A DNA stretch of 64,000 bases, taken from the NCBI RefSeq assembly GCF_963676685.1, contig NC_092354.1, positions 50,654,001-50,718,000 of the forward strand, read 5' to 3'. This document shows positions 13,629 to 57,715 of this stretch, piece after piece. This DNA comes from Mytilus edulis. Lineage: Eukaryota. The notes under the pieces were generated by a model. It was not told the origin of the DNA. It searched no databases and saw only the letters and a program-made list of their open reading frames with translations. The position numbers and the translations under genes are program-made. Position 1 is the first letter of the stretch; each line of letters opens with the position of its first letter.

Positions 13629-14789
13629 CTATGGTCTTGCATATCTTCCAATGAATAGCGGTGTACCTGTTTCGTCATCCTGAATCAAAAACAGGAAAGG
13701 ATGATCAGCAACAAATTGGAATGGCTGAGGCTTAGGGTCTTGTACTGAAGAAAAGCCAACAGTTATTGTGGTAACAGCTGCCGCCTCGGTTCCCTCTTCG
13801 TTCACTTCGATATAAGCTTTGTGACGAGCATCAGTCACGCTGATGCGTGTTTGATCGGATTCGAATATTTCACTAAAGTCTGCAATTTTGTTGTCAAAGA
13901 TTTCTGTAATTCCTAAAGCTGTACAAACTGGCTTCAAATCGTACTCGCTTGTCATTGTAAATTTGGGAATTCTTATGAGTGTCTTTTGAGTCTTTAGGCC
14001 TTTAACAAGTGAATCGACATTATCTATGGTAAGTTTACTTTCTAGTTCAGAGAGTCCGTCACCAGAATTTGGCAAAACAAATACCATTGAGATCTGGTTT
14101 CCTTGATATGGCAATTGTAAAATCTTGCAGTCAAGCGAAAGGTCTTCGCCAGACTTTGCATCAAACTCACCATACATCATATTAACTAGCTTTTGCTCAT
14201 TCGCTTTCACATAAAAGTTTCTTTGTGAAGTTTCATTCTTGTTGAACTCTTTTTTCCACGTACCTTTAAAGTAAATTGCGTTTACTAATACTAATAAAGT
14301 ATTTGCACCAACTACACCTTTTGGAATCATATTTTTTATTATATTGTTGGTATTTTTGGAAATCCAATCATTTATTGTTAACCGTGACTTTTCGGCTTCT
14401 GTAACAAAATCCAAGAGTTCAACATCACTACCATAATATGCAGACGCTTTTGTACTAAAAGTGTTCAAAAGATTTAGACCCTTCCTGGCGAACAACCTGT
14501 TTGCAATAGATATTGATACTCCTTTTGTTGTTCTCGTTAAAAGTTCATCATTAAGATGTTTGTATCCCTGATCGATATCATCTGGTTCTGCATATTCGAA
14601 AATAACAGATTTCATCTGGTTTTTAGTTGTTTTGCCGGTTCCAAGCATAAGAAGTAACAATGCTGACGTGATACTGTATGGCGAAATGAATTCATTTCCA
14701 GTTCTGTCTAGTTTGCTATATAATGAGTTGGAAAAATTTGCAATTCCTTCTTCGAAGACAACATTCGATCCATTAACCTGAGAAGCCAT
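13629..14789 (-). CDS. Serpin S1, intracellular leukocyte-elastase-inhibitor-like, 386 aa, single exon
   Basis: Serpin motifs SPYSI, INDWI, LVNAIYFKGTW, LQLPY, IPKF, hinge EEGTEAAA, ADHPFLF and LFIGR. No signal peptide. Predicted P1-P1' is Ser-Ser (Phe-Ser if the loop is one residue shorter). Confidence 0.97.
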   Translation of the reverse strand: MASQVNGSNVVFEEGIANFSNSLYSKLDRTGNEFISPYSITSALLLLMLGTGKTTKNQMKSVIFEYAEPDDIDQGYKHLNDELLTRTTKGVSISIANRLFARKGLNLLNTFSTKASAYYGSDVELLDFVTEAEKSRLTINDWISKNTNNIIKNMIPKGVVGANTLLVLVNAIYFKGTWKKEFNKNETSQRNFYVKANEQKLVNMMYGEFDAKSGEDLSLDCKILQLPYQGNQISMVFVLPNSGDGLSELESKLTIDNVDSLVKGLKTQKTLIRIPKFTMTSEYDLKPVCTALGITEIFDNKIADFSEIFESDQTRISVTDARHKAYIEVNEEGTEAAAVTTITVGFSSVQDPKPQPFQFVADHPFLFLIQDDETGTPLFIGRYARP

Positions 14790-14851
14790 TTAAGAGCGTA
14801 TAACATGAAATATATCAAGTATACAAGTTGCAAATTATTTTAAGATGCATC

Positions 14852-14900
14852 TTTATATATACCGGTCTAATTGGCCTTGACACATGTTTGTTTGTAAGAA
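14852..14900 (-). promoter_or_regulatory. Core promoter of S1: TATA box with adjacent TCAAGGCCA and ACAAACA motifs
   Basis: TATATAAA ~63 bp upstream of the ATG. An equivalent TATA is present for S2 (28929-28938), S3 (33784-33793), S4 (39192-39201) and S5 (46977-46986). There is no AG dinucleotide on the sense strand in the ~60 nt before the S1 ATG, which argues against an upstream exon. Confidence 0.7.
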
Positions 14901-15910
14901 TATGCATTTATATATTTATATACATAGCTTGTAAATCATGAATTAATTAACATACTTCGCAAAACAGTACCACAATCATCATTAACATAACTTTTTTTAT
15001 GTGACTCAGTAGCGTAGAATTGCATTATGTCATATTCATCTTGTTGACAGAAGTGTGCATGTGAAGAAAAGTCAGAAGATTTATTTTTTCGAATATACAA
15101 TGCCCTTTTAAAGACGACATGCATTTGGTTTTTGGAAGAACCAATCCAATTAATACGCTTGTATTACTTGTAGCTAGGTTGTCTTGATTTTTTTTAAAGT
15201 AGTGTAAATAAAGGTATCAAATGTATTGGATAAGTTTCGAAGACAGACTAAACATTGTAAGAATTGAACAAAGTAGTCTTCTGTGATTTACTGATTTACT
15301 ATATATTTTGAATACAGAATAAGTCATCGCAAAATAACCAAGAATAATTGAAGAATAGTTACATAAATGTAAGACTTAAGAAATACAATTGCAGTTGATC
15401 ATGTTCCGTTTTGAAGGAAAACAGGTCATGCAGATGCGAAAAGAAAGTATGAAATTTATCAAATGAATAATAACAATTAGGTTCTCTGTGATGTACATTT
15501 ATTATCTTGTATGCAGACAATGCTAAAAGCACAGAATTTCTTCTAAATTGTTTATTGACAAGTAGCTAACAGTTGTCACTGTTTGATGACAATTTGTAAA
15601 AAAATATTTGTGCAGTTTTGATTTTGAATTTTTTTTCAAGGAGTTTTTCTCTGATGTTGTTGTGAACAAAATAAGTGTCTATACACATGCTTATCACTTA
15701 AGAGCTTGCAATCATGTTTAGTATAGATACTAGCTTGTTGTTGATGATCCTATGTTGACAAACAGATGTCTTTCATACTAAAGTCAACACATCAAAGAAG
15801 GTTTTTAGCTAGGGATAAGTTTCAAATAATTTTTAATATTACATTAACTATAATAGATATCTACTAGATATGTTAAAATTGGACATTAAATTATGTATTT
15901 ATCATGAATA

Positions 15911-25690: not shown

Positions 25691-27470
25691 TTATCCTGTA
25701 TGAACTAAGTGAACTAAATGAACTTGATTCAATCTTCAAGCAATGAATTCAATACGAGATTAAACCACTAGTAAATGGAACAAGCATCCTCATTATCTAG
25801 CTACACTATATGTACATCTGATGCTGCCGAAATTGGTACCATTAAGGTTATTATCTATTTAATAGACATGTATCATTATTATGACAATTAACCTGCTTAA
25901 AAATTACAGAACTTACCCATTTAGCTATATGAAGAAATAAATTATTTCTATAATTTTTATTATTTTTACAGAAGTTCTTTTTGTTCGTGGATTAAGGTAG
26001 TCATGTGATAGACTTTACCCTGACTCCGGGAAGTTATTGTTCTTTGTCAATATTCTAAGGAATTTGTTTTTTGGAAGAATTTAATTTCGAACGCAGATAG
26101 ATTTTGATGGCAGATTTATGCATATGTTAGAATAGACTTTAAGCGATTAGAAGTTTGACATATATGTGACCCTTATGACATTTCGGGCTAATGGTGGTAT
26201 ATGCCATAGTAGATTGTTTACGTGAAATTAATAATTTAGGATAATATCCCATTTAAATTGTGTTTAAAATTCACACATTATACCGGTCATAGTTAAAAAT
26301 AATTCTAAAACGGGCCAAAACTATACTTGAGATCATTAAAGGCATTTCCAATTGCAGTGTTTATGTTATTCTATAATTTAGTATAAATAATGATGACAGC
26401 ATTAACATTAAGTTTTTTTTAGTCAATCTAGTGTTCACATTGTAAGGATATATATCTGTACATGTTAATCAAACAAGATATTCTTGCCCATAATGACCAA
26501 AAAAATGGTCTCATCCCATGTCCGTTACTATGTATATGTTATATATGTTTGTCTGTCTTAAAACTATATTAACAACTTTTATGTGTTGATCAAAGTTTCC
26601 TTGTATCCCCTAATATTGTTGATTATGCTGTTTAACTGTTCAATCTTACTCTGCATTGATATATGATTTCTTCTTGAGAATAGATATCAAGATCAGGAAA
26701 AGAGCAGTGGTCATTGTAAGTATTAGCTTTATTCAAAGTTAGTTCAACAGGATATTATTTTTTCGTTTACATATTGAGGTCGTCATCATTGAGAGCCAAT
26801 ATATCATCCAAATATCTTAAAGTATTGTAATTTTTTGGTAAAAACCTAGTTTGATGTCGTAGGCTCTAATCGATGTTATAAAACAGTGCCAGAAAAAACC
26901 AAAACATAACTTTTGATGGTTACAAGAAATATTGTGTAAACAGTACTTTAGTTATGGGAACAGAACATTTATTCTTTCACACTACTTATCTATGACATAG
27001 ATAAATCGAACAGACACAAAGAAGTAACAAATAAAACAAAATACAATTCGAGGTAAAGCAAGTATAAATATACAATGTATAGTTCTTATATAAGATTTTA
27101 ACGGTGACACATGCTACAAACTTACTGGTAACATGTGTTTATTTACAGGTAAAACCTTTGCTAAAATCCCACTAGTTCTAAAAATAATAAAATGAGATAG
27201 TTCTGCATCAAGACAGTCACCTTTATACAATATGCGTATTCGGACATATCTTCAAATATCCCATAACGAAAATTGATGAAAAAATATATGTTTTTTATAA
27301 AGATCGGAACAACTGAGTTTTTATTCAGGAGCTGACTGTATTTTACCATCTTTAAGCAGCTATTTATGCATGATATAAAACGGTCAATTGTATCAAAGTA
27401 AAAAATAAAACTGCTCAATTGATTTCTATATTTTTTACTAAAACAATAGTCAAACATATGTTACTATATA

Positions 27471-28631
27471 CTATGGTCTTGCATATCTTCCAATGAATAG
27501 CGGTGTACCTGTTTCGTCATCCTGAATTAAAAACAGGAAAGGATGATCAGCAATAAATTGAAATGGCTGTGGCTTAGGATCTTGTACTGAAGCAATTACA
27601 CCAGTTATTGTAGTAACAGCTGCCGCTTCCGTTCCCTCTTCGTTCACTTCGATATAAGCTTTGTGACATGCATCAGACACGACAACGCGTGTTTGATCTG
27701 ATTCGAAGATTTCACTAAAGTCTGCAATTTTGTCGTCAAAGATTTCTGTTATTCCTAAAGCTGTACAAACTGGCTTCAAATCGTACTCGCTTGTCATTGT
27801 AAATTTGGGAATTCTTATGAGTGTCTTTTGAGTCTTTAGGCCTTTAACAAGTGTATCGACATTATCTATAGTAAGTTTACTTTCTAGTTCAGAGAGTCCG
27901 TCACCAGAATTTGGCAAAACAAATACCATTGAGATCTGGTTTCCTTGATATGGCAATTGTAAAATCTTGCAGTCAAGCGAAAGGTCTTCGCCCGACTTTG
28001 CATCAAACTCACCATACATCATATTAACTAGCTTTTGCTCATTCGCTTTCACGAAAAAGTTTCTTTGTAAAGTGTCATTCTTGTTGAACTCTTTTTTCCA
28101 AGTACCTTTAAAGTAAATTGCGTTTACTAATACTACTAAAGTATTTGCATCAACTACACCTTTTGGAATCATATCTTTTATTATATTGTTGGTATTTTTT
28201 GAAATCCAATCATTTATTGTCAATCGTGACTGTTCTGCTTCTGTTACAAAATCCAAGAGTTCAACATCACTTCCATAATATGTAGTCGCTTTTGTACTAA
28301 AAGTGTTCAAAAGATTTAGACCCTTCCTGGCGAACAACCTGTTTGCAATAGATATTGATACTCCTTTTGCTGTTCTCGTTAAGAGTTCATTATTAAGACG
28401 TTTGTATCCGTGGTCAATATCGTCTGGTTCTTCATATTCGAAAATAACAGATTTCATCTGGTTTTTAGTCGTTTTGCCGGTTCCAAGCATAAGAAGTAAC
28501 AATGCTGACGTGATACTGTATGGCGAAATGAATTCATTTCCAGTTCTGTCTAGTTTGCTATACAAGGAGTTGGAAAAATTTGCAATTCCTTCTTCAAAGA
28601 CAACATTCGATACATTTACTTGAGAAGCCAT
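27471..28631 (-). CDS. Serpin S2, 386 aa from the paralogous ATG (398 aa if the TE-derived ATG at 28667 is used)
   Basis: Closely similar to S1. RCL EEGTEAAAVTTITGVIA-SVQDP, predicted P1 Ala. The MASQ start matches S1 and S3. Confidence 0.95.
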   Translation of the reverse strand: MASQVNVSNVVFEEGIANFSNSLYSKLDRTGNEFISPYSITSALLLLMLGTGKTTKNQMKSVIFEYEEPDDIDHGYKRLNNELLTRTAKGVSISIANRLFARKGLNLLNTFSTKATTYYGSDVELLDFVTEAEQSRLTINDWISKNTNNIIKDMIPKGVVDANTLVVLVNAIYFKGTWKKEFNKNDTLQRNFFVKANEQKLVNMMYGEFDAKSGEDLSLDCKILQLPYQGNQISMVFVLPNSGDGLSELESKLTIDNVDTLVKGLKTQKTLIRIPKFTMTSEYDLKPVCTALGITEIFDDKIADFSEIFESDQTRVVVSDACHKAYIEVNEEGTEAAAVTTITGVIASVQDPKPQPFQFIADHPFLFLIQDDETGTPLFIGRYARP

Positions 28632-28866
28632 CGGTGACAATATAATGGAATTTGATGCGACTGTCATACAAGTGAGAGGTTTAGCTAGCTATAAAACCAG
28701 GTTCAATCCACCATTTTCTACATTTGAAAATGCCTGTACCAAGTCAGGAATATGACAGTTCTTGTCCATTCATTTTTGATGCGTTTTGTTATTTGATTTT
28801 GCCATGTGATTATGGACTTTCCGAATTGATTTTCCTCTGAGTTCAGTATTTTTGTGATTTTACTTT
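28632..28866 (+). mobile_element. 235-bp interspersed repeat inserted immediately 5' of the S2 ATG
   Basis: The empty site cat|ttaagagc is seen in S1 and S3. The insert matches the family at 11875-12160 and 48930-49240. Confidence 0.92.
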
Positions 28867-29389
28867 TTAAGAGCCTATAACACGAAATACATCAACTATG
28901 ATAGTTGCAAGTTATTTTAAGATGCATCTTTATATATACTGGTCTAATCGGCTTTGACACATGTTTGTTTGTAAGAATATGCATTTATATATTTATATAC
29001 ATAGCTTGTAAATCATGAATTAATTAACATACTTCGCAAAACAGCACCACAATCATCATTCACATATGTGACTCAGTAGCATAGAATTGCATTATGTTTT
29101 ATTTATCTTGCTGACAGAAGTGTGCATTTGAAAAAAAGGAAGCAGTTTTATATTTTTTCGATTATGTAATTCTCTTTAAAATACGTTTGTATTACTTGTG
29201 GCTGGTTGTTTTTGATTTTTTGTAAAGTAGTTGTAAATAAAGGTATCAGAATGTATTGGATAAGTTTGGAAGGCAGATTAAACACTGTAAGAATGAAACA
29301 AAGTTGTCTTTTGTGATTTACTGATTTACTATATATTTCAATGCTCTTAAATTTTGTACTTGTTTGGCTTTATAAATATTTTGATATGA

Positions 29390-31070: not shown

Positions 31071-32560
31071 TAGTAGTTGTGTTGTAAAATGTCTCATTAA
31101 TACAAACACAGTAATTTAACATGTTTTGCCGACAGTAACTAATGAAAAATATCAGACCCATGATTCTAAACGAGGACAATAGGTTGGGTTAAACATGTTT
31201 GTGAATTGAAACTTAAAACAGCACAATACAAAGAATTTTTTTCACACCCAACAACACATCTTAAAACTGCATTGATTTGTGTTAAGTTGAAATAAATAAC
31301 CAAAAGAAAAAGGAAAGCTGTATCTTTCAAATGGTGATGATTAAACAATTGGAATTATATTCTGTCTATGAAGAAATAACATAAAAATGTGGTGCACACT
31401 GAACCCGCGTTACTGTTGAAAGTGGCCTTAAACATCAATCAACCAATTACAGCTTGAATTTTTCATTTTGCATGTGAAGGTGTGTAGACGTTTTGGTATA
31501 TGGTATTATATAGCCACCAAATTAATGTGAATTAACCTGTTCTTAAATGACTGGTAAATAGAAGTTGATCTTTCAGACTGATCCACTGCAGAAAATCGCT
31601 ACTTTAATGAAAATTTGGTTGCAATCAATTACAATTTTTTTTCGGTCTTTGTTAAACTGGTTCAGGAGCTATATTTGATCTCTAACTGGATCATTTGTGA
31701 TTAAGATTATAACACAATTGTGACTACTGTACTTCTTTTTTGTCAATTTCTACCTTTGTCAAATTAAGGGAATTGTATGTGATTATCATACAAGTGAAAG
31801 GTTTAGCTAGCTATAAAACCATGTTTAATCCACCATTTGCTACATAAGAAAATCCCTGTACCAAGTTTGGATTATGATAGCATATGAAAAGAACTTTCTG
31901 TTTTGGATTTTTCTTGGAGCAAGGTATTTTTGTTGTTTTACTTTTTAGAACATACTGAACTGACGGTAAACTACCTTAGTGCAGTACTGAATTTACTGCT
32001 ATTGGCTAGTTTTAGAATTGACGGCAGGTCTGAAAAAGGCCAAATAGTATTTTTGTCAAACTTTATACATAAGATCAGAATGAAATTCCACTGATTGATG
32101 CGCATTTTTCAAGAAACATATCATAGAACCTCGGCTTTTGAATGCAATAATACGGGAAAACCAACAATTATCATTAGAAACAAACAAGACAAGACCGAAA
32201 AAAATAAAAAGCAAGCAAACACTATTTTGTTTTTATAAAACGTTATAAAAAAATCACACAAATTATACAAACTAACTTAAAAGAGATGTTTATTTACAAA
32301 TATAATATAACAATGATTTCCTTATGCTTTGAATTTAAAACTTGATAGCTTTTCAAGAAACTTAATGGTTTCAAGACAGATAGGTATGAACACAATCTGT
32401 ATATACAAAGTAAGTATCAAAACTAAAATGTATACTACTTCTAAACAAACTTTGAAGTCAATCTATTCATCAAAATATGATTTTTCAAGTATGATCATTT
32501 TACACTTTTGAGGAAGTAGGTGCATTTCCCTGTTTCTTCCATAATTATGTTACTGTTACA

Positions 32561-33721
32561 CTATGGCCTGGCATATCTTCCAATAAACAGCGGTGTTCCT
32601 GTTTCGTCATCCTGAATGACAAACAGGAAAGGATGATCTGCCACGAATTCAAATGGCTGAGGATCAGGGATCCTCGCCGAAGCTAATGCAAGATTTAATG
32701 TAGTAGCGGCTGCAGCTTCACTTCCCTCTTCGTTCACTTCAATAAAAGCTTTGTGACGTGCATCAGTTACGCGCACGCTAGTGGCATCAGATTTGAACAT
32801 TTCACTAAAGTCAGCAAGTTTGTCGTCAAAGATTTCTGTAATTCCTAAAGCTGTACAAACTGGCTTCAAATCGTACTCGCTCGTCATTGTAAATTTCGGA
32901 ATTCGTATTATTGTTTCTTGTGTCTTTAAACTGCTTAAGAGTGTTTTGAAAGTATTAACGGTAAGTTTACTTTCTAGTTCAGAGAGTCCGTCACCGGAAT
33001 TTGGCAAAACAAATACCATTGAGATCTGGTTTCCTTGATATGGCAATTGTAAAATCTTGCAGTCAAGCGAAAGGTCTTCGCCCGACTTTGCATCAAACTC
33101 ACCATACATCATATTAACTAGCTTTTGCTCATTCGCTTTCACGAAAAAGTTTCTTTGTGAAGTGTCATTCTTGTTGAACTCTTTTTTCCACGTACCTTTG
33201 AAGTAAATTGCGTTTACTAATACTACTAAAGTATTTGCACCAACTACACCTTTTGGAATCATATCTTTTATTATATTGTTGGTATTTTTGGAAATCCAAT
33301 CATTTATTGTTAACCGTGACTTTTCGGCTTCTGTTACAAAATCCAAGAGTTCAACATCACTTCCATAATATGTAGTCGCTTTTGTACTAAAAGTGTTCAA
33401 AAGATTTAGACCCTTCCTGGCGAACAACCTGTTTGCAATAGATATTGATACTCCTTTTGTTGTTCTCGTTAAAAGTTCATCATTAAGACGTTTGTATCCC
33501 TGATCTATATCATCTGGTTCTGCATATTCGAAAATAACAGATTTCATCTGGTTTTTAGTCGTTTTGCCGGTTCCAAGCATAAGAAGTAACAATGCTGACG
33601 TGATACTGTATGGCGAAATAAATTCATTTCCAGTTCTGTCTAGTTTGCTATACAAGGAGTTGGAAAAATTTGCAATCCCTTCTTCAAAGACAACATTCGA
33701 TCCATTTACCTGAGAAGCCAT
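32561..33721 (-). CDS. Serpin S3, 386 aa, chimeric (S1/S2-type N-terminal two thirds, S4-type C-terminal third)
   Basis: Full set of serpin motifs. RCL EEGSEAAAATTLNLALA-SARIP, predicted P1 Ala. Confidence 0.97.
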   Translation of the reverse strand: MASQVNGSNVVFEEGIANFSNSLYSKLDRTGNEFISPYSITSALLLLMLGTGKTTKNQMKSVIFEYAEPDDIDQGYKRLNDELLTRTTKGVSISIANRLFARKGLNLLNTFSTKATTYYGSDVELLDFVTEAEKSRLTINDWISKNTNNIIKDMIPKGVVGANTLVVLVNAIYFKGTWKKEFNKNDTSQRNFFVKANEQKLVNMMYGEFDAKSGEDLSLDCKILQLPYQGNQISMVFVLPNSGDGLSELESKLTVNTFKTLLSSLKTQETIIRIPKFTMTSEYDLKPVCTALGITEIFDDKLADFSEMFKSDATSVRVTDARHKAFIEVNEEGSEAAAATTLNLALASARIPDPQPFEFVADHPFLFVIQDDETGTPLFIGRYARP

Positions 33722-34246
33722 TTAAGAGCCTATAACATGAAATACATCAAGTATGATAGTTGCAAATTATTTTAAGATGCATCTTTATATATACCGGTAA
33801 AATCGGCCTTGACACATGTTTGTTTGTAAGAATATGCATTTATATATTTATATACAAAGCTTGTAAATCATGAATTAATTAACATACTTCGCAAAACAGC
33901 ACCACAATCATCATTCACATATGTGACTCAGTAGCATAGAATTGCATTATGTTTTATTTATCTTGTTGACAGAAGTGTGCATTTGAAAAAAAGGAAGCAG
34001 TTTTATTTTTTTTTTTCGATTATCTAATTCTCTTTAAAATACGTTTGTATTACTTGTGGCTGGTTGTTTTTGATTTTTTGTAAAGTAGTTGTAAATAAAG
34101 GTATCAGAATGTATTGGATAAGTTTGGAAGGCAGATTAAACACTGTAAGAATGAAACAAAGTTTTTTTTGTGATTTACTGATTTACTATATATTTCAATG
34201 CTCTTAAATTTTGTACTTGTTTGGCTTTATAAATATTTTGATATGA

Positions 34247-34290
34247 GCGTCACTGATGAGTCTAATATAGACGAAACGCGCGTCTGGTGT
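34247..34290 (+). ncRNA. Minimal type I hammerhead ribozyme
   Basis: GCGUCA CUGAUGA GUCUA-AUA-UAGAC GAAA CGCGCG UC UGGUGU, within repeat fragment 34194-34323. Confidence 0.85.
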
Positions 34291-34575
34291 ACTAAATTAT
34301 AATCCTGATACCTTTGATAACTATTGAATACAGAATAGGTTGTCTCAAAATAACCAAGAATAATTGAAGAATAGTTATATAAATGTAAGACTTAAGAAAT
34401 ATAAGTTGCAGTTTATCATGTTCCGTTTCATGTAGGAACGAAAAAAGAGTATAAAATTGATCAAATGAATTATAAAAGTACTATGAGGTCTCTGTGATTT
34501 ACATTTAATGTACTGTATGCAGACAATGCAAACAGCACAGTATTACTTTTAAATTGTTTATCGACAAGTAGCTAA

Positions 34576-34971
34576 TAAAATTGAGAATGGCAACGGGGAA
34601 TGTGCCAAAGAGACAACAACCCGACCATAGAGCAGACAACAGCAGAAGGTCAATAACAGGTCTTCAATGCAACGAGAAATTCTCGCACCCGGAGGCGTCC
34701 TTCCGCTGACCCCTAAACAAATATATACTGGTTCAGTGATAATGAACACCATACTAAACTCCAAATTGTACACAAGAAACTAAAAGTTAAAATAATACAA
34801 GACTAACAAAGGTCAGAGGCTCCTGACTTGGGACAGGCGCAAAAATGCGGCGGGGTTAAACATGTTTGTGAGATCTCAACCCTCCCCCTATACCTCTAGC
34901 CAACGCAGAAAAGTAAACGCATAACAATACGCACATTAAAATCCAGTTCAAGAGAAATCCGAGTCTGATGT
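34576..34971. mobile_element. ~400-bp interspersed repeat present only in the second duplication unit
   Basis: Empty site at ~29716. Related copies at 39593-39766 and, diverged, 58510-58900. Confidence 0.85.
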
Positions 34972-37862: not shown

Positions 37863-39146
37863 CTATGGCCTGGCATATCTTCCAATAAACAGCGGTGCCC
37901 CTGTTTCGTCATCCTGAATGACAAACAGGAAAGGATGATCTGCCACGAATTCAAATGGCTGAGGATCAGGGATCCTCGCCGAAGTTAATGCAATATTTAA
38001 TGTAGTAGCGGCTGCAGCCTCGCTTCCCTCTTCGTTCACTTCAATAAAAGCTTTGTGACGGGCATCAGTCACGCGGACGCGAGTGGCATCAGATTTGAAC
38101 ATTTCACTAAAGTCAGCAATTTTGTCGTCAAAGATTTCTGTAATTCCTAAAGCTGTACAAACTGGCTTCAAATCGTACTCGCTTGTCATTGTAAATTTCG
38201 GAATTCGTATTATTGTTTCTTGTGTCTTTAAACTGCTTAAGAGTGTTTTGAAAGTATTAACGGTAAGTTTACTTTCTAGTTCGGACAGTCCATCACCAGA
38301 ATTTGGCAAAACAAATATCATAGAGATCTGATTTCCCTGATATGGCAGTTGTAAAACCTTGCAGTCAAGCGAAAGGTCCTCACCAGATTTTGCATCAAAC
38401 TTGCCATACATCATATTTACCAGCTTCTGTTCATTCGCTCTCACGAAAAAGTTTCTTTGTGAGGTGTCATTCGTGTTAAATTCTTTTTCCCATTTGCCTT
38501 TAAAGTAAATAGCGTTTGTTAATACTAATAAAGTATTTGCATTCAGAAGACCTTTTGGAATCATATTTTGTATTCGGTTGTTTGTATTATTAGAAATCCA
38601 ATTATTTATTGTCAATCGTGAATTTTCCGCTTCTTTTACAAAATCCAAGGGTTCAACATCACTTCCATAATATGTAGACGCTTTTGTAGAAAAAGTGTTC
38701 AACAGGTTAAGACCCTTACTGCTGTATAACCTGTTTGCCATAGATAATGTAACTCCGGATGTTGTTCTCGTAAAGAGCTTCTCATTAAGAAGTTTGTATC
38801 CCTGGTCAATATCATCTGGTTCTTCATATTCGAAAATGACCGACTTCATCTGTTTGTTTGTCGTTTTGCCGGTTCCGAGCATAAGGAGTAACAATGCTGA
38901 CGTAATACTGTATGGTGAAAGGAATTCATTTCCAGTTCTGTCTAGTTTGCTGTACAAAGAGTTGGAAAAATTTGCAATTCCTTCTTCGAAGACTATATTC
39001 GATCTATTGACCGGAGACGAAAAATGTGTAAACCCTTCTTCGAAGACTATATCCGAACTATTAACCAGAGAAGAAAAATTCGCAATCCCTTCTTCTAAAA
39101 TTATATTCGATCCATTAACCTGAGAAGCCATGGAAGAGGTATTCAT
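37863..39146 (-). CDS. Serpin S4, 427 aa, with triplicated N-terminal 18-aa segment
   Basis: Full set of serpin motifs. RCL EEGSEAAAATTLNIALT-SARIP, predicted P1 Thr. An alternative start lies at 39131 (MASQ). Confidence 0.96.
   Translation of the reverse strand: MNTSSMASQVNGSNIILEEGIANFSSLVNSSDIVFEEGFTHFSSPVNRSNIVFEEGIANFSNSLYSKLDRTGNEFLSPYSITSALLLLMLGTGKTTNKQMKSVIFEYEEPDDIDQGYKLLNEKLFTRTTSGVTLSMANRLYSSKGLNLLNTFSTKASTYYGSDVEPLDFVKEAENSRLTINNWISNNTNNRIQNMIPKGLLNANTLLVLTNAIYFKGKWEKEFNTNDTSQRNFFVRANEQKLVNMMYGKFDAKSGEDLSLDCKVLQLPYQGNQISMIFVLPNSGDGLSELESKLTVNTFKTLLSSLKTQETIIRIPKFTMTSEYDLKPVCTALGITEIFDDKIADFSEMFKSDATRVRVTDARHKAFIEVNEEGSEAAAATTLNIALTSARIPDPQPFEFVADHPFLFVIQDDETGAPLFIGRYARP
38962..39123 (-). 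repeat. In-frame 54-bp tandem repeat x3 in S4
   Basis: gaaaaa anchors at 38965, 39019 and 39073. Encodes QVNGSNIILEEGIANFSS / LVNSSDIVFEEGFTHFSS / PVNRSNIVFEEGIANFSN. Confidence 0.95.
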
Positions 39147-39874
39147 GATAAAGTAAATATACTAGGAGTATTTTTTTTTCAATGATGCATCTTTATATAT
39201 ACCATGTATACTTTACTTGTCAGCCTTGACAAATGTTTGTTTGTAAGACTATTTATAAGCTTTAATGCCATGCATTAATCAACGTCATTTGACTAACAGT
39301 ATGTCTACCATCAGTGACACGCCTAACTTATACCTTGGTATTTTGATTACGGCTTTCTTCTCTTGTTGACAGTTGTGTGCACTTTAATAAGACCTCATTA
39401 ACTTTATTCTTTTAAATTATTTTATTCGGTTAATCCTAATAAAGCCAACATTTGTTTGTTACCTTTTTATGACGGCATTTGTTTTATTGAGGATTTAGTC
39501 CCATTTCTATATCTGTATAAAGGTAATTGACACCAAAGTGTAATATCGACTATCAAGTGCATTTGACGAGTGAATTAGTCCAATTAGAAACTAAAATTGA
39601 GAATGGAAATGGGGAATCTGTCACAGATACAACAACCCGACCATAGAGCAGACCACAGCTGAAGCCCACCAATGGGTCTTCAATGCAGCGAGAAATTTAC
39701 GCACCCGGAGGCGTCCTTCACCTGGCCCCTAAACAAATGTGTATACTAGTTCAGTGATAATGGACGCTTACAGAATTGAAGGATTTTTAGTTTTGAGAAT
39801 GAGTCATTACAAAATAACCACAACTTATTTGAGAAAATTATGTAAATGTATGAGTGTCAGGTAGACTCACTGTA

Positions 39875-45504: not shown

Positions 45505-45668
45505 CTGTTGATTTATCTATTTTCGCGGATATCAATTTTCATGGATTGAGGAAAACTTTCGAATTCGTATAGAACATTTGTAATTCGATGTTTATTGGAA
45601 TTCGTGGTTTCCAGTTGACCATGAAATCAACAAAAATTGGTATTCAACGAATAATAATGAATCAACAT
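45505..45668. mobile_element. Tc1/mariner-type MITE in the S5 3' flank
   Basis: Imperfect TIRs ctgttgattta.. / ..tgaatcaaca with TA flanks. Confidence 0.5.
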
Positions 45669-45751: not shown

Positions 45752-46903
45752 CTATGGTCTTGTGTATCTTCCAATAAACAGCGGTGTTCCTGTCTCGTCA
45801 TCCTGAATAATGAACAAAAAAGGATGATCTGCTACAAACTGGAATGGTGTTGGTTTAGGAACTGTGTTTGACCTCATTTGTATAACGGCCGTAGTGGCTG
45901 CTGCCGCCTCGCTTCCTTCTTCGTTTACCTCAATATAAGCTTTGTGACGCATATCACTCACGTGTGCATGAGATGGAGTCATTTCACTAAAATCTGCTAT
46001 CATTGGATCAAATATTTCCGTAACTCCTAATATTGACATTATAGGTTTTAAATCGTACTCACGTTGCATTGTAAATTTTGGAATTCGAATGATTGTTCTC
46101 TGTGTCTTTAGTTCGTTTAAAAGTGTAGTTAAGTCATCCATTGTAATTGTATCTTCAAGTTCAGTGAGTCCGGCACCAGAATTTGGTAAAACAAATATCA
46201 TAGACATCTTGTTTCCTTTGTACGGAAGCTGCAAAATCTTACAGTCGAGATCAAGGTCTTCGCCAGACTTAGCATCAAACTCACCATACATCATACGAAC
46301 AAGTGTTTGCTCGCTTGTGCCGATAAAAAAGTTTCTTTGTCTTGTGTCATTCTTCTTAAATTCCGTTTTCCATGTTCCTTTGAAGTAAATAGCGTTAGCA
46401 AGAACAAGTAATGTATCTTTATTAAGAATATTTTTCGGAATGATATTTTTAATTTTGTTGTTTGTATTTGCAGATATCCAGTTATTTATTGTCAATCGTG
46501 AATTTTCCGTATTTTTAGCAAAATCCAAGCGGTCAACTTCACTACCATAGATGGTTAATGCCTTTGTAGAGAAAGTTGTTAAAAGATTTAGACCCTGTCT
46601 AGCGTATAACTTATTAGCAATAGAAAATGTAACGCCCGGTGTTGTTCTCGTCACTAGTTTGTCATTAAGAATTGTGTATCCTTGGTGGACATCAGTTGGT
46701 TCTTCATATTCAAAAATGGCAGTCTCCATTTCATATTTTGTCGTGGTTCCGGTTCCTAGAATGAGCAATAACAACGCGGACGTGATACTGTATGGTGAAA
46801 TGAATTCATTGCCTGTTCTCTCTAGTGCACTGTACAGGAAAATCGAAAAATTTGCAATCCCTTCTTCGAATATAACATTGGATACTGCAGGCTGAATATT
46901 CAT
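45752..46903 (-). CDS. Serpin S5, 383 aa, predicted inhibitor of trypsin-like proteases
   Basis: Full set of serpin motifs. RCL EEGSEAAAATTAVIQMR-SNTVP, P1-P1' Arg-Ser in the canonical 17-residue register. Confidence 0.97.
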   Translation of the reverse strand: MNIQPAVSNVIFEEGIANFSIFLYSALERTGNEFISPYSITSALLLLILGTGTTTKYEMETAIFEYEEPTDVHQGYTILNDKLVTRTTPGVTFSIANKLYARQGLNLLTTFSTKALTIYGSEVDRLDFAKNTENSRLTINNWISANTNNKIKNIIPKNILNKDTLLVLANAIYFKGTWKTEFKKNDTRQRNFFIGTSEQTLVRMMYGEFDAKSGEDLDLDCKILQLPYKGNKMSMIFVLPNSGAGLTELEDTITMDDLTTLLNELKTQRTIIRIPKFTMQREYDLKPIMSILGVTEIFDPMIADFSEMTPSHAHVSDMRHKAYIEVNEEGSEAAAATTAVIQMRSNTVPKPTPFQFVADHPFLFIIQDDETGTPLFIGRYTRP

Positions 46904-47087
46904 TAGAAAAAGTTATAAGGAAAACAATATTCAGTAAAGTAAATATGCTAGAAGTAAAAATGAATGCAATGTATCATTTTATATACTAGGCCCTGTCATA
47001 TTTGACACTTGTTTTCTGACAAGAATATTAACGTATAAGTTTTAAATTAGCGTAATGTCTTTTGGAAAATAATTTATCTGCAATTTA

Positions 47088-47586: not shown

Positions 47587-47636
<50 letters not shown>
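47587..47636. repeat. (TA)n microsatellite
   Basis: About 25 TA units. A second tract lies at 48003-48060. Confidence 0.98.
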
Positions 47637-47638
<2 letters not shown>

Positions 47639-47968
47639 AAAATTATTAAAAGATAAAAACGGTTTCAATGCATCACTTTTTTACTAGTACTTTCACTGCT
47701 TCCGCAGATCTTCAGGTAATGTGACTTGTATATAAATAAAACAATTGATTGACGTTAACAATAGTATGACGTTAACAAATACAAGGGAGACTACTAATGA
47801 CATTAGTAGTCTCCCTTGTATTTGTTAACGTCATACTATTGTTAACGTCAATCAATTGTTTTATTTATATACAAGTCACATTACCTGAAGATCTGCGGAA
47901 GCAGTGAAAGTACTAGTAAAAAAGTGATGCATTGAAACCGTTTTTATCTTTTAATAATTTTCTTATAT
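47632..47968. repeat. Perfect 337-bp palindrome (168-bp arms, 1-nt spacer at 47800), probable inverted Penelope-like terminal repeat
   Basis: The arms read as exact reverse complements, lie between two (TA)n tracts, and contain a hammerhead motif. Confidence 0.93.
47881..47919 (+). ncRNA. Minimal hammerhead ribozyme motif (mirror copy on minus strand 47681-47719)
   Basis: UUAC CUGAAGA U-CUGC-GGAA-GCAG-U GAAA GUAC UA GUAA: core boxes, GNRA-capped stem II, palindromic AGUACU stem III, CUA triplet. The first pair of stem II is a U-U mismatch. Confidence 0.7.
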
Positions 47969-48000
47969 GTTACCAGCATACGGACTTTACTTAACTTTTT

Positions 48001-48002
<2 letters not shown>

Positions 48003-48060
<58 letters not shown>
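48003..48060. repeat. (TA)n microsatellite
   Basis: About 29 TA units. Confidence 0.98.
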
Positions 48061-54668: not shown

Positions 54669-54795
54669 TATAATATAATATAATATAGTAATATGATATA
54701 TAATATAATAAATATAATATAATATAATATAATATAATATAATATAATATAATATAATATATAATATAAAATATAATATAATATAATATAATTAG
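54669..54795. repeat. (AATAT)n microsatellite
   Basis: Read directly from the sequence. A second tract lies at 55484-55521. Confidence 0.95.
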
Positions 54796-55483
54796 AATAT
54801 GATATATTATTGTATAGCAATATAATATTTCCCACAGAATGTAACCAAAAGTTAGCATGCAATAAACTCTGTTAATATATAAGAAGTAGTAAATACAGAT
54901 AAATTGTATGTGTAATACAATCATTGGCAAGCGCGCTGTATCAGCCACCCGTGATGATATCGATATCAGCACGGTTTCAAAAGCTTTATCACACCTTTAA
55001 TTTGTATGACGTCACGTCATCGATTGCATTTCACACCTCCTTATCTGTATGACGTCATGTCACATAAAAAACATCTACTTGAGGTATATTATGTATATAA
55101 TAAAGTGTATATGATATGGCTTTTCCAATATCACACAGCGTATCAACCCTCAACCAATATAATCCCTCGAGCAGAGCTCTTGGGATTATATTGGTGTCTC
55201 AGGTTGATACGGATGCGATATTGAAAACGCCATATGATTTTCTCTATATATTGCACTAGTGAAATAAATCTTCAAAATTCATGACGTCATCAACGTTTAA
55301 ATCTTAGTTAAAACCAATTTTTACTTTCAAATATTATATTGCTATACAATAAAAGGGTTATTGCATGAATATTGGGGAATTTTGTCCCTCGTAGAACATA
55401 TATCATGTATATTGCACTCGCAAGCTCGTGCAATATAAAGTTCTACTCGGGACAATATTCCCCAATATTCGTGCAATAACCCT
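54796..55483. mobile_element. Hairpin-rich element(s) between two (AATAT)n tracts
   Basis: Imperfect palindromes at 55114-55235 and 55354-55483. Confidence 0.55.
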
Positions 55484-56563
55484 ATAATATAATATAATAT
55501 AATATAATATAATATAATATATACCCCTGCCTTAAGGTTTTAACAGAACCAGATATTTATTAAAAACATTCTCGAGCTCCATACAGAATATTTTCCGCAT
55601 ACGCAAAGGATTTGTTTTATATTTTGCTGTGAAAATAGTTCTATCGTGTATGCAATAATTTGTAATAACAGTTTAAGACATAAATTAAGTATTTAAGTAT
55701 TTAAATTATAAACGTATCATTAACGGATACACGTCTTTTCTTTCCCTTAGTGACCCTCTGACTTTCTTGAAGGATTTTTACAGCTAACGACTACGCCACA
55801 TAGTAATGTTCGTTATGATGATGTTGTTGAGGTTACATTTGGGGTTAACATCGTCGTTTATACCCAAAATATATGTTTACATTGAACAGTTTTTGTTCTT
55901 CTATTAGCGGGGTTCAAACCCCCCGAGATGATCGCATCATGACTTCACTGCCAACACCTTGTCTTGCGTCCTAGACCAGTCGACAAACTAGGATTTATTA
56001 GGTACGGCTTTTGTTTTTGAATAATGTCTTGTCCCGTCGGCTTCATCTTGCATGATGTATTGCAACAAGTAAATAAAATTGTTTGTGTTAATAACGTACG
56101 AAAATGTTTGCTTGTAACACACCTCGTCAATGAATTGTTATTGTTATTATGACGGCATTTCCTATTAATTTAACACGGTTGGTTTGTCATTTTCATCTGT
56201 TTTTCATATGGTCATTTATAATTCATTCATTCATTCATTCGTTAAAAACATGAAGTTTATACAAGGAAGATAAATCGTTTTACATCAAACTGCTTCAATC
56301 GGCAATCCTCGGGTGACTCAGCTACTGTACGGAATCGGCCGAGTTGAGACGAATGCAAATTGCTTATTTCGATTGATCTTTTGAAAAAGTAAGAAAAAAA
56401 ACAATACTTGTAAATTGTATCTTCGTTTTAAATATAAAAAAGAGTGTTGTTAAAAAATAATATAAAAAAGAAAACGAAATGTACAAACAAAAGAAATCAG
56501 CAAATTAATTAACTCGTACTTTAGTCTAAAACAATGAAACGCGTCGGATATATCATAAGGCTT

Positions 56564-57715
56564 TTATATCAAGGGGTTAACAACACGTCCTAAAAATATA
56601 ATTGTTCCAGTTAAATTATCACGGATCGCAAAAACAAACGGATGATTCGCTATAAATTGGAAAGAGCGGGGTTTCTTACCATCTCGTCTTGGTACCCGAA
56701 CAGCTGTACTTCCGGAAGCCTCGGTTCCATCTTCATTTACCTCTATAAATGCTTTGTGCACAGCAGTGCTGACATAAAGTGATCGCTTAACGTTTGCCAT
56801 GTTTTTGAAATTTGCTAATCGCTGATTGAATATGTCGGTCATACCACGTGTTTTAAGTATTGGAATCAAATCGTATCCAGTTTCTATTTTAAACTTTGGA
56901 ATTTTGATAACAGTCTCTTGTGTTCTTAGTCCACCCAGAATGTTTTTGAAAGTATTCATAGACAGTTTAGATTCCAGTTGATTCAATCCATTCACATTAT
57001 TTGGAAGAAGAAATACCATAGACAACCTCTTGCCGCTATAATGTAGCTGAAGAATTTTACAGTTCAATGCAGTATTGTACCCAGATTTCACGTTATAAAT
57101 GGCATTCATCATGTTAACTTGTTTCCGGTTCCGCTGGTTGACACTAAATGGTTCCCTTCTAGTTCTTTTCTGGTCGAACTTAGCGTCCCACGATCCTTTA
57201 AAATAAATAGCATTAACTAAAACTAAAGCTGTTTTGGCGTCTATCATTTTCCTTTCGATCACACTTTTTATTTTGTTATTGGTTTTTCCTGCAATCCAAT
57301 CATTTATACTTTTTCGAGATTTTTCCCGTTGTCTTGAAAAGTCCATTAGTTGCACCGCACTGCCATAATAACGTTTGACCTTATCTTTGTAAGTAGAAAA
57401 TGCATTACTTCCATATAATCTGTTCGCTACTAAAAGCGATGCGCCTTTTTTTGCATTCCTAGTCAGCTTCAGTTCGAGTCGTTTGTAATTGAAATGCACG
57501 TTCGTAGGCAAATTATTCAAGTTCATAGATGACATCATTTGATTTTTGGTCTTCCCATCCGTCCCCAACATGAGCATGAGCAGTGCTGTGGTAATACTAT
57601 AGGGTGATAGTACTTCATTCCCGTCTTTTGGTACTTCATCATACAAGGAAAATGCAAAATTTCCGATCGCTTGTTCAAACGCGACGTTTGATACAAGTCC
57701 TCGAGCTAAAGCCAT
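56564..57715 (-). CDS. Serpin S6, 383 aa, divergent and strongly basic
   Basis: Serpin motifs SPYSI, LVNAIYFKGSW, IPKF, EDGTEAS and ANHPF. The first ATG is at 57715; the ORF-track start at 57748 is GTG. RCL EDGTEASGSTAVRVPRR-DGKK. Confidence 0.95.
   Translation of the reverse strand: MALARGLVSNVAFEQAIGNFAFSLYDEVPKDGNEVLSPYSITTALLMLMLGTDGKTKNQMMSSMNLNNLPTNVHFNYKRLELKLTRNAKKGASLLVANRLYGSNAFSTYKDKVKRYYGSAVQLMDFSRQREKSRKSINDWIAGKTNNKIKSVIERKMIDAKTALVLVNAIYFKGSWDAKFDQKRTRREPFSVNQRNRKQVNMMNAIYNVKSGYNTALNCKILQLHYSGKRLSMVFLLPNNVNGLNQLESKLSMNTFKNILGGLRTQETVIKIPKFKIETGYDLIPILKTRGMTDIFNQRLANFKNMANVKRSLYVSTAVHKAFIEVNEDGTEASGSTAVRVPRRDGKKPRSFQFIANHPFVFAIRDNLTGTIIFLGRVVNPLI

What the first reader, a model, noticed from the sequence alone, without database searches (positions are those of the whole stretch)
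13629..57715. Six-gene intronless serpin array forming a protease-bait repertoire
Seen: six intact co-oriented single-exon serpins without signal peptides. Five have a clear TATA box and S6 a TATA-like one. All have small-residue hinges of the inhibitory type. Counting from the hinge as in alpha1-antitrypsin, P4-P1' are VGFS-S, GVIA-S, LALA-S, IALT-S, IQMR-S and VPRR-D, spanning elastase-like, possibly chymotrypsin-like, and trypsin/convertase-like specificity. Inference: a lineage-specific defence or protease-control locus, possibly founded by a retrocopy, that diversifies by duplication, loop mutation and recombination. This is my best candidate for the undescribed system in the window.
Basis: partly seen in the sequence, partly recalled or inferred. 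Interest (0 to 1): 0.8.

Follow-up and report, generated by a model that had tools for sequence, protein, structure and literature searches.

The report
Tandem serpin gene array in mussel
This is a real but ordinary tandem family of single-exon protease-inhibitor (serpin) genes in the Mediterranean mussel, several of which match a serpin already purified from the fluid under the shell and from the shell itself.

Summary
The window (Mytilus galloprovincialis, G000 contig C11) carries six intact, co-oriented serpin ORFs. Each matches Pfam PF00079 over its full length.

- The array is larger than described: two more intact genes and a 5' fragment lie just past the window.
- Growth by duplication, recombination and loop change is supported. 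S2-S4 sit in ~5.2-kb units, S3 is a clean hybrid gene, and P6-P1 is the most variable stretch.
- A founding retrocopy has no support. 20 of 29 serpin matches genome-wide are single open frames, on four chromosome-scale contigs plus one small contig.
- It is not undescribed. RefSeq names these genes. S1-S4 are co-orthologues of M. coruscus PILP-B1, the match for MSP22.8, a serpin purified from extrapallial fluid and shell matrix (PMC5623705).
- Intronless tandem serpin arrays are known in ticks (PMC13116602).

The open point is how a serpin without a signal peptide reaches the shell.

The scan also noted another serpin array elsewhere in this genome (s1-839062).

Interest is low to moderate.

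The parts
13629..14789 (-). S1 serpin CDS, 386 aa, P4-P1' VGFS|S
   Evidence: ORF. Pfam 5.3e-110. 99.7% identical to RefSeq 'serpin B3-like [M. galloprovincialis]' P0001, the only difference being P1. AF2 model pLDDT 87.5 with serpin fold.
27471..28631 (-). S2 serpin CDS, 386 aa from the conserved Met (open frame reaches 28667), GVIA|S
   Evidence: 100% identical to P0004.
28632..28865 (-). 234-bp mobile element inserted directly before the S2 ATG, moving the shared promoter to -307
   Evidence: Gap in the S1/S2 alignment. Sequence. 40 of 40 scored genomic copies are 99-100% identical, from 1043 first-look candidates.
32561..33721 (-). S3 serpin CDS, 386 aa, LALA|S; hybrid gene
   Evidence: 321/386 identical to PILP-B1, the same 83.161% printed for the MSP22.8 transcript contig (PMC5623705 section 8).
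32959..32981 (-). Crossover interval inside S3
   Evidence: 85 of 85 informative sites are S1/S2-like 5' of it, and 56 of 59 are S4-like 3' of it.
37863..39146 (-). S4 serpin CDS, 427 aa, IALT|S
   Evidence: M. edulis orthologue P0010 is also 427 aa. Contigs of runs X1-X3 cover 37717-38988.
38965..39127 (-). 54-bp x 3 in-frame tandem repeat that triplicates the N-terminal helix-A segment of S4
   Evidence: TRF. Translation. Seven N-x-S/T sequons in S4.
45752..46903 (-). S5 serpin CDS, 383 aa, IQMR|S
   Evidence: P1 Arg is kept in all 13 S5-type sequences listed, while P2 varies (M/T/H/V).
56564..57715 (-). S6 serpin CDS, 383 aa, VPRR|D, pI 10.25
   Evidence: Orthologues P0046 and P0047 keep the basic P2-P1.
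14854..14861 (-). S1 TATA box (-72), inside a promoter module shared by S1-S5
33786..33793 (-). S3 TATA box (-72). A transcript-like contig ends at 33754, 33 nt before the ATG.
   Evidence: record 1 of run X1.
39194..39201 (-). S4 TATA box (-55 from the first ATG)
46978..46985 (-). S5 TATA box (-82)
57765..57772 (-). S6 TATA-like TATTTATA (-57)
28931..28938 (-). S2 TATA box (-307, displaced by the insertion)
13486..13491 (-). S1 AATAAA, 138 nt after the stop. Equivalent signals: S2 27320-27325, S3 32289-32294, S4 37583-37588, S5 45591-45596. None within 500 nt for S6.

Best explanation
The locus is a tandem family of at least eight intact serpin genes on one chromosome of Mytilus galloprovincialis; six lie in the window. 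Each gene is a self-contained unit: a TATA promoter, a 5' UTR of about 35 nt, one coding exon and (except S6) an AATAAA signal.

The proteins resemble ov-serpins (vertebrate clade B). They have no N-terminal signal peptide, no extensions, an inhibitory-type hinge and an exposed flexible reactive-centre loop. They most likely act as suicide-substrate inhibitors (inferred). The target protease cuts the loop at P1-P1', the loop inserts into sheet A, and the protease is trapped as an acyl-enzyme.

The scaffold is under purifying selection. The bait residues P6-P1 differ between paralogues, orthologues and even alleles, so the array offers several specificities (inferred from P1):
- S1-S4: small P1 with hydrophobic P2. 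This suits elastase-like serine proteases or, as in SERPINB3, papain-like cysteine proteases.
- S5 and S6: P1 Arg, which suits trypsin-like or convertase-like proteases.

New copies arise by unequal crossing-over between ~5.2-kb units. S3 is the hybrid expected from an S2-like by S4-like exchange.

S1-S4 are the M. galloprovincialis co-orthologues of M. coruscus PILP-B1, the database match of MSP22.8. That serpin is released by mantle-edge cells into the extrapallial fluid and built into the shell matrix. The most likely role of at least these four is extracellular protection of the shell-forming compartment from endogenous or foreign proteases.

Export is probably by an ovalbumin/PAI-2-like uncleaved internal signal (the hydrophobic helix B, residues 40-51) or by cell release. 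This step is inferred.
For: Genes and family: six full-length PF00079 ORFs. Best solved relatives are a serpin, 9j91_A (1.9e-71), and SERPINB3 (8.8e-69). The S1 model has pLDDT 87.5 and pTM 0.87, with only residues 1-7 and 336-354 (the loop) below 50. Foldseek gives TM 0.83-0.93 to SERPINB3/B4-derived, B1, PAI-2 and ovalbumin chains.

Extent: C11 has 8 full-length single-frame matches and one fragment within about 75 kb.

Transcription units: TATA modules and in-frame stops at -3 in S1 and S3. AATAAA follows 7 of 8 genes. S1 words are held at 0.71-0.91 by 20 runs from 11 studies, 14 of them guessed to be RNA.

Expression: in 3 of 4 runs laid, contigs cover the S3 5' CDS and S4 between 37717 and 38988. 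The fourth run, X9, has one 123-nt piece in S4. One contig ends 33 nt before the S3 ATG without a loose end. No joint falls in any serpin part. Twelve of 30 bins, nearly all unique intergenic DNA, have no depth in any run.

Selection: body dN/dS is 0.15-0.21 in 10 of 10 pairs. S1 and S2 differ at 4 of 7 P6-P1' residues against 22 of 379 elsewhere (Fisher 5e-4). S7 and S8 differ at 4 of 7 against 40 of 369 (p 0.004). P6-P1 is the top entropy window, 1.58 against a mean of 0.33 bits, across 12 sequences. The RefSeq allele of S1 differs only at P1.

Recombination: ~5.2-kb units with 92-96% identical intergenic DNA. S3 shows 85/85 then 56/59 informative sites around a single switch.

Identity with the known protein: S1-S4 and PILP-B1 (P0008) form one clade, 100/99. 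Identities are 82.1-84.2%, and S3 is 321/386 = 83.161%, the figure printed for the MSP22.8 contig (PMC5623705 sections 7, 8, 12).

Precedents: SERPINB3 has G351-F352-G353-S354|S355 and inhibits cathepsins L, K and S (PMC4136820 passages). S1 has V-G-F-S|S. Ov-serpins lack cleavable signals yet some are released (PMC2212304 and PMC4136820 passages).
Against: No listed run is on record as RNA. 'RNA' is the tool's guess plus my reading of the coverage pattern. Contigs give neither level, tissue nor strand.

The S4 5' end (38989-39146, the repeat) is covered in 0 of 4 runs. The contig over the S3 5' end has 10 differences in 355 letters, so it could come from S1 or S2.

Loop pN/pS stays below 1 (0.36-0.9). 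pS is also raised in the S1-S2 loop (0.296, against body dS 0.134). S3 and S4 show no significant excess (2 of 7 against 44 of 379, p 0.20). Positive selection is therefore not shown, and a mutational or micro-conversion hot spot fits as well.

Inhibition has not been shown for any member. The MSP22.8 paper saw no change after alkaline treatment and found no protease partner. It explains the 100-kDa band by dimers.

A serpin without a signal peptide in a secreted fluid is unexplained. That paper never mentions a signal peptide (0 occurrences). The three sequons are weak evidence for ER transit.

The 83.161% figure is shared by S3, the last 386 residues of S4, and P0006. It could also be coincidence.

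P1 is placed by alignment only.
Confidence: 0.8

Rival explanations
1. The proteins are purely intracellular cytoprotective serpins, as most vertebrate clade B members are. They would guard the cytosol of hemocytes or epithelial cells against leaked lysosomal or granule proteases. Their presence in extrapallial fluid and shell would come from cell lysis or from cells trapped in the shell.
For: No N-terminal hydrophobic stretch. Closest solved relatives are SERPINB3, B4 and B1. Clade B serpins are described as cytoplasmic or nuclear with occasional release (PMC4136820 passage). Shell proteomes also hold actin, tubulin and myosin (Perna viridis table passages).
Against: MSP22.8 is reported as secreted by mantle-edge cells. 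It is a main protein purified from extrapallial fluid, runs at 55 kDa against a theoretical 43 kDa, and was not detected in hemolymph hemocytes (PMC5623705 abstract and discussion). S1-S3 keep sequons at N6, N18 and N185, and S4 has seven.
Confidence: 0.2
2. At least the S1-S4 proteins serve mainly as a structural, polymer-forming component of the shell matrix framework rather than as inhibitors. The variable loop would tune self-association.
For: MSP22.8 forms 100-kDa and >130-kDa species that resist reduction, urea and alkaline treatment. No protease partner was found (PMC5623705 discussion). S1-S5 are acidic, pI 4.9-5.3, as many matrix proteins are (the comparison is recalled).
Against: Hinges are of the inhibitory type in 8 of 8 genes. 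Variation is focused on P6-P1, the protease-contact residues. S5 and S6 keep P1 Arg across species. Non-inhibitory serpins usually lose the small-residue hinge (recalled).
Confidence: 0.12
3. One reading: a lineage-specific, previously undescribed defence locus founded by a retrocopy.
For: All coding regions are intronless. The C11 clade holds only Mytilus sequences and unnamed sequences. My searches found no paper on the array itself.
Against: 20 of 29 serpin matches in the genome are full-length single frames, on four chromosome-scale contigs plus one small contig. None shows a clear multi-exon pattern, so no intron-bearing parent was identified. One copy, L019, has an unclassified ~330-bp interruption. 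Copies share promoters and kilobases of flank, which means DNA-level duplication. The product is already known as PILP-B1/MSP22.8 and named in RefSeq. Subclades have orthologues in M. californianus, M. coruscus and M. trossulus, so the array predates the genus radiation.
Confidence: 0.07

Closest known systems
MSP22.8 / protease inhibitor-like protein-B1 (PILP-B1, AKS48146.1, A0A0K0YAZ2) of Mytilus shell matrix and extrapallial fluid
   Same: S1-S4 group with PILP-B1 at 100/99 support and are 82.1-84.2% identical. S3 gives the exact 83.161% printed for the M. galloprovincialis MSP22.8 transcript contig (PMC5623705).
   Different: The papers treat one protein. Here it is four young paralogues with different P4-P1, inside a larger array of eight. 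Neither the genomic arrangement nor the missing signal peptide is discussed in the text I read. The text has 0 occurrences of 'signal peptide'; I did not search it for the gene arrangement.
Ixodes scapularis serpin clusters (74 genes, mostly intronless, dense head-to-tail tandem arrays)
   Same: Intronless genes, head-to-tail arrays, local duplication with divergent loops (PMC13116602 passages).
   Different: Tick serpins are mostly secreted with signal peptides and are injected into hosts. The mussel ones lack signal peptides.
Human SERPINB3/SERPINB4 and the clade B (ov-serpin) clusters
   Same: No signal peptide. Tandem young duplicates whose loops diverged and changed target class. The S1 loop VGFS|S resembles B3 GFGS|S. 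The fold match has TM up to 0.93.
   Different: Vertebrate clade B genes have conserved introns and often a CD loop. These genes are intronless and orthology to clade B was not shown.
Rodent Serpina1/Serpina3 arrays: accelerated evolution of the reactive centre (Hill and Hastie 1987)
   Same: Conserved scaffold with hypervariable P-side loop residues among tandem paralogues.
   Different: I saw that paper only as a reference-list entry in PMC4136820; its content is recalled. A dN/dS above 1 was not reached here.

Membership tests
Serpin superfamily (PF00079) | Full-length match to the family profile above the curated cut-off | tested here: met
   6 of 6 window ORFs score 360-369 bits against a cut-off of 27, over positions 2/3-370 of 370. 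S7 and S8 match full length.
Serpin superfamily (PF00079) | Serpin fold (three sheets, about nine helices, exposed loop) | tested here: met
   S1 model pLDDT 87.5, pTM 0.87. 415 PDB chains match at E <= 0.001, the top ones all serpins with TM 0.83-0.93. Only S1 was modelled.
Inhibitory serpins | Hinge: P17 Glu, P15 Gly, P14 Thr/Ser, small residues at P12-P9 | tested here: met
   8 of 8 genes. S6 has ASGS at P12-P9.
Inhibitory serpins | Covalent SDS-stable complex with a target protease | not testable with these tools
   Needs recombinant protein. The MSP22.8 paper saw no alkali-labile complex.
Ov-serpin / vertebrate clade B | No cleavable N-terminal signal peptide and no N- or C-terminal extension | tested here: met
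   Hydropathy of residues 1-20 is at most 1.62. The alignment to SERPINB3 runs to both ends. S4 has a 41-residue repeat extension. No dedicated predictor was run.
Ov-serpin / vertebrate clade B | Conserved clade B exon-intron pattern | tested here: not met
   Coding regions are single ORFs. So these work like ov-serpins but are not filed as clade B members.
PILP-B1 / MSP22.8 orthologue group | Monophyly and high identity with AKS48146.1 | tested here: met
   S1-S4 only: clade support 100/99, identity 82.1-84.2%. S5 is 70.5% and S6-S8 are 47-53%.
PILP-B1 / MSP22.8 orthologue group | The mass-spectrometry peptides of MSP22.8 map to the protein | not testable with these tools
   The peptide table is not in the held text.
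PILP-B1 / MSP22.8 orthologue group | Expression in mantle-edge epithelium | not tested
   Runs carry coded samples without tissue.
Processed retrogene | Intronless copy of an intron-bearing parent, without the parent's promoter or flanks | tested here: not met
   No clearly intron-split serpin among 29 matches. One copy, L019, has an unclassified ~330-bp interruption. Paralogues share promoter modules and kilobases of flank.

The most novel reading that the evidence does not exclude
Mussels may export a genetically fluid set of signal-peptide-less serpins into the shell-forming compartment by an ovalbumin-like uncleaved internal signal. There, an array that is reshuffled by unequal crossing-over (hybrid S3), hit by a very young mobile element (S2), and variable at P1 even between alleles (S1 Ser/Ala) would give individuals different extracellular bait sets. 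These would include SERPINB3-like cross-class inhibitors of cysteine proteases and would guard the shell matrix against borers, fouling organisms and microbes.
Probability: 0.25. Interest if true: 0.5.

Novelty: new member of a known kind. Interest (0 to 1): 0.3.

Why it matters
It ties a purified shell and extrapallial-fluid protein (MSP22.8) to a defined genomic locus. What was treated as one protein turns out to be four young paralogues with different bait residues, inside an eight-gene array.

That gives shell-biology and mussel-immunity groups concrete genes to express and assay. It also poses a clear question: how does a serpin without a signal peptide reach the shell?

For serpin biology in general it adds one more example of a well-known pattern: tandem duplication, a hypervariable loop and hybrid genes.

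Tried and rejected
Closest outgroup and its intron content. I could not settle this.
- The listing of cluster members gave no organism names for the 50-57% identical unnamed relatives P0012-P0035.
- The one metagenome scan returned only 32-38% identical, prokaryote-like serpin loci L021-L100. I did not use them.
- These relatives are full-length 385-388 aa gene calls on metagenome or Logan contigs. That suggests intronless genes in other mytilids, but the source organism is unproven.

Literature. Four searches found no paper on the arrangement or intron content of bivalve serpin genes:
- serpin + Mytilus: 114 papers, 25 listed.
- serpin + intronless + bivalve: 2 papers, neither on topic.
- serpin + tandem duplication + mollusc + reactive center loop: 31 papers at 3 of 4 terms.
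- serpin + oyster + intron + genome-wide.
Subscription journals are not covered. The M. coruscus shell proteome paper that named PILP-B1 was not seen.

Bacterial origin of the intronless state. I considered this because two bacterial serpins group with the signal-bearing C3 serpin at 100/99. I rejected it as evidence: only 2 bacterial rows, long branches (0.4-0.89) and deviant composition.

Positive selection. Nei-Gojobori counts show concentration of change in the loop, but not dN above dS. No site-model test was run.

Micro-conversion. Each of the four P4-P1 12-mers of S1-S4 occurs once in the 120 kb around the array, so no donor lies within it.

Rfam gathering search of the window: 0 matches.

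The byssus paper's serpin (ATIII-like, MG516730.1) was not linked to this array.

Rows left out of the tree: I chose 59 rows by hand. They were 8 array genes, 11 other own-genome serpins and 40 of the 130 proteins then held. Broken copies L017, L019 and L020 were omitted.

Full report
WHAT IS THERE.

The window is G000 contig C11, 50,654,001-50,718,000. Its best protein match is RefSeq 'serpin B3-like [Mytilus galloprovincialis]' (P0001), listed as 100% identical to S1 and 99.7%.

One search lists exactly six ORFs of at least 250 aa, all on the minus strand:
- S1 13629-14789
- S2 27471-28667 (conserved Met at 28631)
- S3 32561-33721
- S4 37863-39146
- S5 45752-46903
- S6 56564-57748 as a GTG frame (first ATG at 57715)

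All six match Pfam Serpin over positions 2/3-370 of 370, at E 1.4e-107 to 3.3e-110. Identity to S1 is 93, 89, 81, 70 and 47%.

The other four ORFs of at least 110 aa are two antisense frames inside S4 and S5 and two low-complexity frames.

The best solved relatives by sequence are a serpin, 9j91_A (1.9e-71), SERPINB3 (8.8e-69), SERPINB4/B3 and SERPINB1.

An AlphaFold2 model of S1, from a 46-row alignment, has pLDDT 87.5 and pTM 0.87. Only residues 1-7 and 336-354 (the reactive-centre loop) fall below 50. Foldseek finds serpins only at the top, with TM 0.83-0.93.

Hinges are of the inhibitory type in all genes.

None has an N-terminal hydrophobic stretch. The most hydrophobic 12-mer in the first 60 residues is helix B (ITSALLLLMLGT, residues 40-51 in S1). 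S4 is the exception, because its N-terminal extension pushes helix B beyond residue 60.

S1, S3, S4 and S5 share a promoter module with a TATA box 55-82 nt before the ATG. S6 has TATTTATA at -57. S2 has the module at -307, because a 234-bp element sits directly before its ATG.

S1 and S3 have an in-frame TAA at -3.

AATAAA follows the stop by 72-275 nt in 7 of 8 genes. S6 has none within 500 nt.

THE ARRAY IS LARGER, AND INTRONLESSNESS IS GENERAL.

A six-frame search of the whole assembly with PF00079 gave 29 matches (a lower bound). Twenty of them cover essentially the whole profile in one open frame without a stop, on C3, C5, C7, C11 and a small contig, C883.

On C11 two further intact genes lie 10.7 and 20.1 kb past the window end. 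S7 is 375 aa and S8 is 376 aa. A 5' fragment matching profile positions 3-113 lies beyond them. The 18 kb before the window, and the flanking stretches L001 and L006, hold no further serpin ORF.

The other loci are also single ORFs. One, on C3, carries a hydrophobic leader (MKKIPF...LFILTF) in the same ORF. So in this genome a secreted serpin has its leader in the same exon, and the lack of one in the array is real.

No clearly intron-bearing 'parent' serpin was seen. The copies that are not intact are broken by a frameshift, an unclassified ~330-bp insertion, or fragmentation.

PHYLOGENY AND AGE.

In a 59-row maximum-likelihood tree the C11 genes form one clade (100/99) with four Mytilus subclades:
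- S1-S4 with M. coruscus PILP-B1, two M. californianus genes, and M. edulis and M. trossulus orthologues
- S5 with M. californianus and M. trossulus orthologues
- S7 and S8 with M. coruscus, M. trossulus and M. edulis genes
- S6 with an M. californianus gene

Unnamed metagenome and Logan sequences of 50-57% identity interleave with these.

The M. californianus members sit on one 66.0-Mb contig and the M. trossulus members on one 88.1-Mb contig.

The four subclades therefore predate the Mytilus radiation. S1-S4 multiplied after the split from M. californianus and M. coruscus.

HOW IT GROWS.

S2, S3 and S4 lie in ~5.2-kb units whose intergenic DNA is 92-96% identical.

S3 is a hybrid. At sites where S1 = S2 and S4 differs, 85 of 85 are S1/S2-like up to window position 32981. 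From 32959 on, 56 of 59 are S4-like.

S3 has the 5' part and upstream flank of the downstream neighbour type (S2), and the 3' part of the upstream neighbour (S4). It sits between the two. That is the duplication product expected from unequal crossing-over between misaligned S2-like and S4-like genes (inference).

WHERE IT VARIES.

Body dN/dS is 0.15-0.21 in all 10 pairs tested, so every copy is under constraint.

Between S1 and S2, all four of P4-P1 differ (7 of 12 bases), while the flanking codons shown (P8-P5 and P1'-P6') differ at only two synonymous sites. That is 4 of 7 P6-P1' residues against 22 of 379 elsewhere (p 5e-4). S7 and S8 show 4 of 7 against 40 of 369 (p 0.004). S3 and S4 show 2 of 7 against 44 of 379 (not significant).

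Across 12 sequences of the PILP-B1 subclade the most variable 6-residue window is P6-P1, at 1.58 bits against a mean of 0.33.

The RefSeq allele of S1 differs from the window's S1 in one residue, which is P1 (Ser/Ala).

S5-type genes keep P1 Arg while P2 varies. S6-type genes keep two basic residues.

Against a selection claim: loop pN/pS stays below 1, and loop pS is also raised between S1 and S2.

EXPRESSION.

Sampled words of S1 are held at 0.71-0.91 by 20 runs from 11 studies. Fourteen are guessed to be RNA and none is on record as RNA.

I laid contigs of four runs (four studies) on 33400-39399.
- Three runs cover the S3 5' CDS and S4 between 37717 and 38988. Run X9 has only one 123-nt piece in S4.
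- X1 pieces over 38287-38894 have 0-3 differences each.
- One X1 contig ends at 33754, 33 nt before the S3 ATG and 32-39 nt after the TATA box, with no loose end.
- No joint falls in a serpin part.
- Twelve of 30 bins, nearly all unique intergenic DNA, have no depth in any run. Repeats at 34200-34999 have depths up to 28,762. That pattern fits RNA rather than genomic libraries.

Limits:
- Contigs show neither level, strand nor tissue.
- The contig over the S3 5' end has 10 differences in 355 letters and may derive from S1 or S2.
- The S4 repeat region, 38989-39146, is uncovered.

WHAT IS KNOWN.

PMC5623705 (abstract; sections 7, 8 and 12 part 1; passages). MSP22.8 was purified from M. galloprovincialis extrapallial fluid. 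It is reported as secreted by mantle-edge cells and found in shell matrix. Mass spectrometry identified it as a serpin most like M. coruscus PILP-B1 (AKS48146.1 = A0A0K0YAZ2 = P0008), with PILP-B2 and PILP-B3 also hit. Its transcript contig is 83.161% identical to PILP-B1.

S3 is 321/386 = 83.161% identical to P0008. So are P0006 and the last 386 residues of S4. S1 is 84.197% and S2 is 82.124%.

The paper reports 55 kDa against a theoretical 43 kDa, SDS-stable 100-kDa forms, no effect of alkaline treatment and no protease partner. The term 'signal peptide' does not occur in it.

Other sources:
- Serpin was a shell-matrix domain unique to M. edulis among four bivalves (PMC5854119 passages).
- Perna viridis shell holds a serpin-domain protein (PMC6641155 passages).
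- 74 mostly intronless, tandem serpin genes are described in Ixodes scapularis, and single-exon serpins in Lepidoptera (PMC13116602 passages).
- SERPINB3 (G351, F352, S354|S355) inhibits cysteine cathepsins, and SERPINB4 inhibits serine proteases. Clade B serpins lack signal peptides, yet some are released (PMC4136820 passages).
- Ov-serpins lack cleavable signals and translocate inefficiently (PMC2212304 passage).
- A recent paper on tandem SERPINA duplication and venom inhibitors was seen only as a listing and the start of its abstract (PMC12646145).

VERDICT.

The thing is an ordinary tandem family of inhibitory, ov-serpin-like genes with a diversified bait loop. Four members correspond to an already purified shell and extrapallial-fluid serpin.

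The retrocopy founder and the 'undescribed system' readings are not supported.

What is new is modest: the gene map, the hybrid S3, the focal P4-P1 change, and the link between locus and protein.

The open point of real interest is the export of a signal-less serpin.

The scan also holds a first-reader note on another tandem serpin array elsewhere in this genome (s1-839062). One search shows a second cluster on C5.

Noticed in passing
window 28632-28865: A 234-bp element is inserted exactly between the shared promoter/5' UTR and the S2 ATG. It supplies an in-frame upstream ATG and several short upstream ORFs. 40 of 40 scored genomic copies are full-length and 99-100% identical (1043 first-look candidates), so it is a very young, abundant mobile element and the insertion may be polymorphic.
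   Followed up: partly
window 34200-34999, 36200-36399, 36600-36799, 37000-37199: Intergenic repeat pieces between S3 and S4 have very high summed word depth in the RNA-like runs (up to 28,762 in X2), with many loose ends. They look like highly transcribed dispersed repeats. 34576-34972 is an insertion specific to the S3 unit, with a copy about 60 kb away.
   Followed up: no
window 47587-48060: (TA)25 and (TA)29 runs flank the 337-bp palindrome that another first-reader note calls a double hammerhead. An Rfam gathering-threshold scan of the whole window found no family, hammerhead included.
   Followed up: partly
window 2470-3090, 8206-8974, 9635-10164: Tandem arrays of 161-162-bp units. The consensus units at 2470 and 8206 look like reverse complements of each other. 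Copies of the 9635 unit recur 9-15 kb before the window.
   Followed up: no
window 38965-39127: An in-frame 54-bp x 3 repeat triples the N-terminal helix-A segment of S4 and adds N-x-S sequons, giving seven in all. The M. edulis orthologue P0010 has the same 427-aa length, so it is not an assembly artefact. No contig of four runs covered it.
   Followed up: partly
window 13749-13751 region (S1 P1 codon): The only amino-acid difference between the window's S1 and the RefSeq M. galloprovincialis protein P0001 is P1, Ser against Ala.
   Followed up: partly
L007 (G000 C3:51,887,800-51,889,700): The one serpin with a signal-like leader in the same ORF groups with two bacterial serpins (Planctomycetota, KSB3) at 100/99. 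All are on long branches and only two bacterial rows were included.
   Followed up: no
L017, L019, L020 (G000 C3 and C5): Broken serpin copies. L017 is frameshifted next to an intact twin. L019 is interrupted by about 330 bp rich in G and C runs; this could be an insertion or a gained intron. L020 is in pieces.
   Followed up: no
L004 2885-3883 (between S7 and S8): A 333-aa open frame with a weak reverse-transcriptase match (RVT_1, E 1.2e-6, 28.8 bits, just under the 29.6 cut-off). It is a retroelement remnant inside the array.
   Followed up: partly
window 56564-57715 and beyond the window (S7, S8): Charge split within the array: S1-S5 have pI 4.9-5.3, S6 has 10.25, and S7 and S8 have 9.3.
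   Followed up: no
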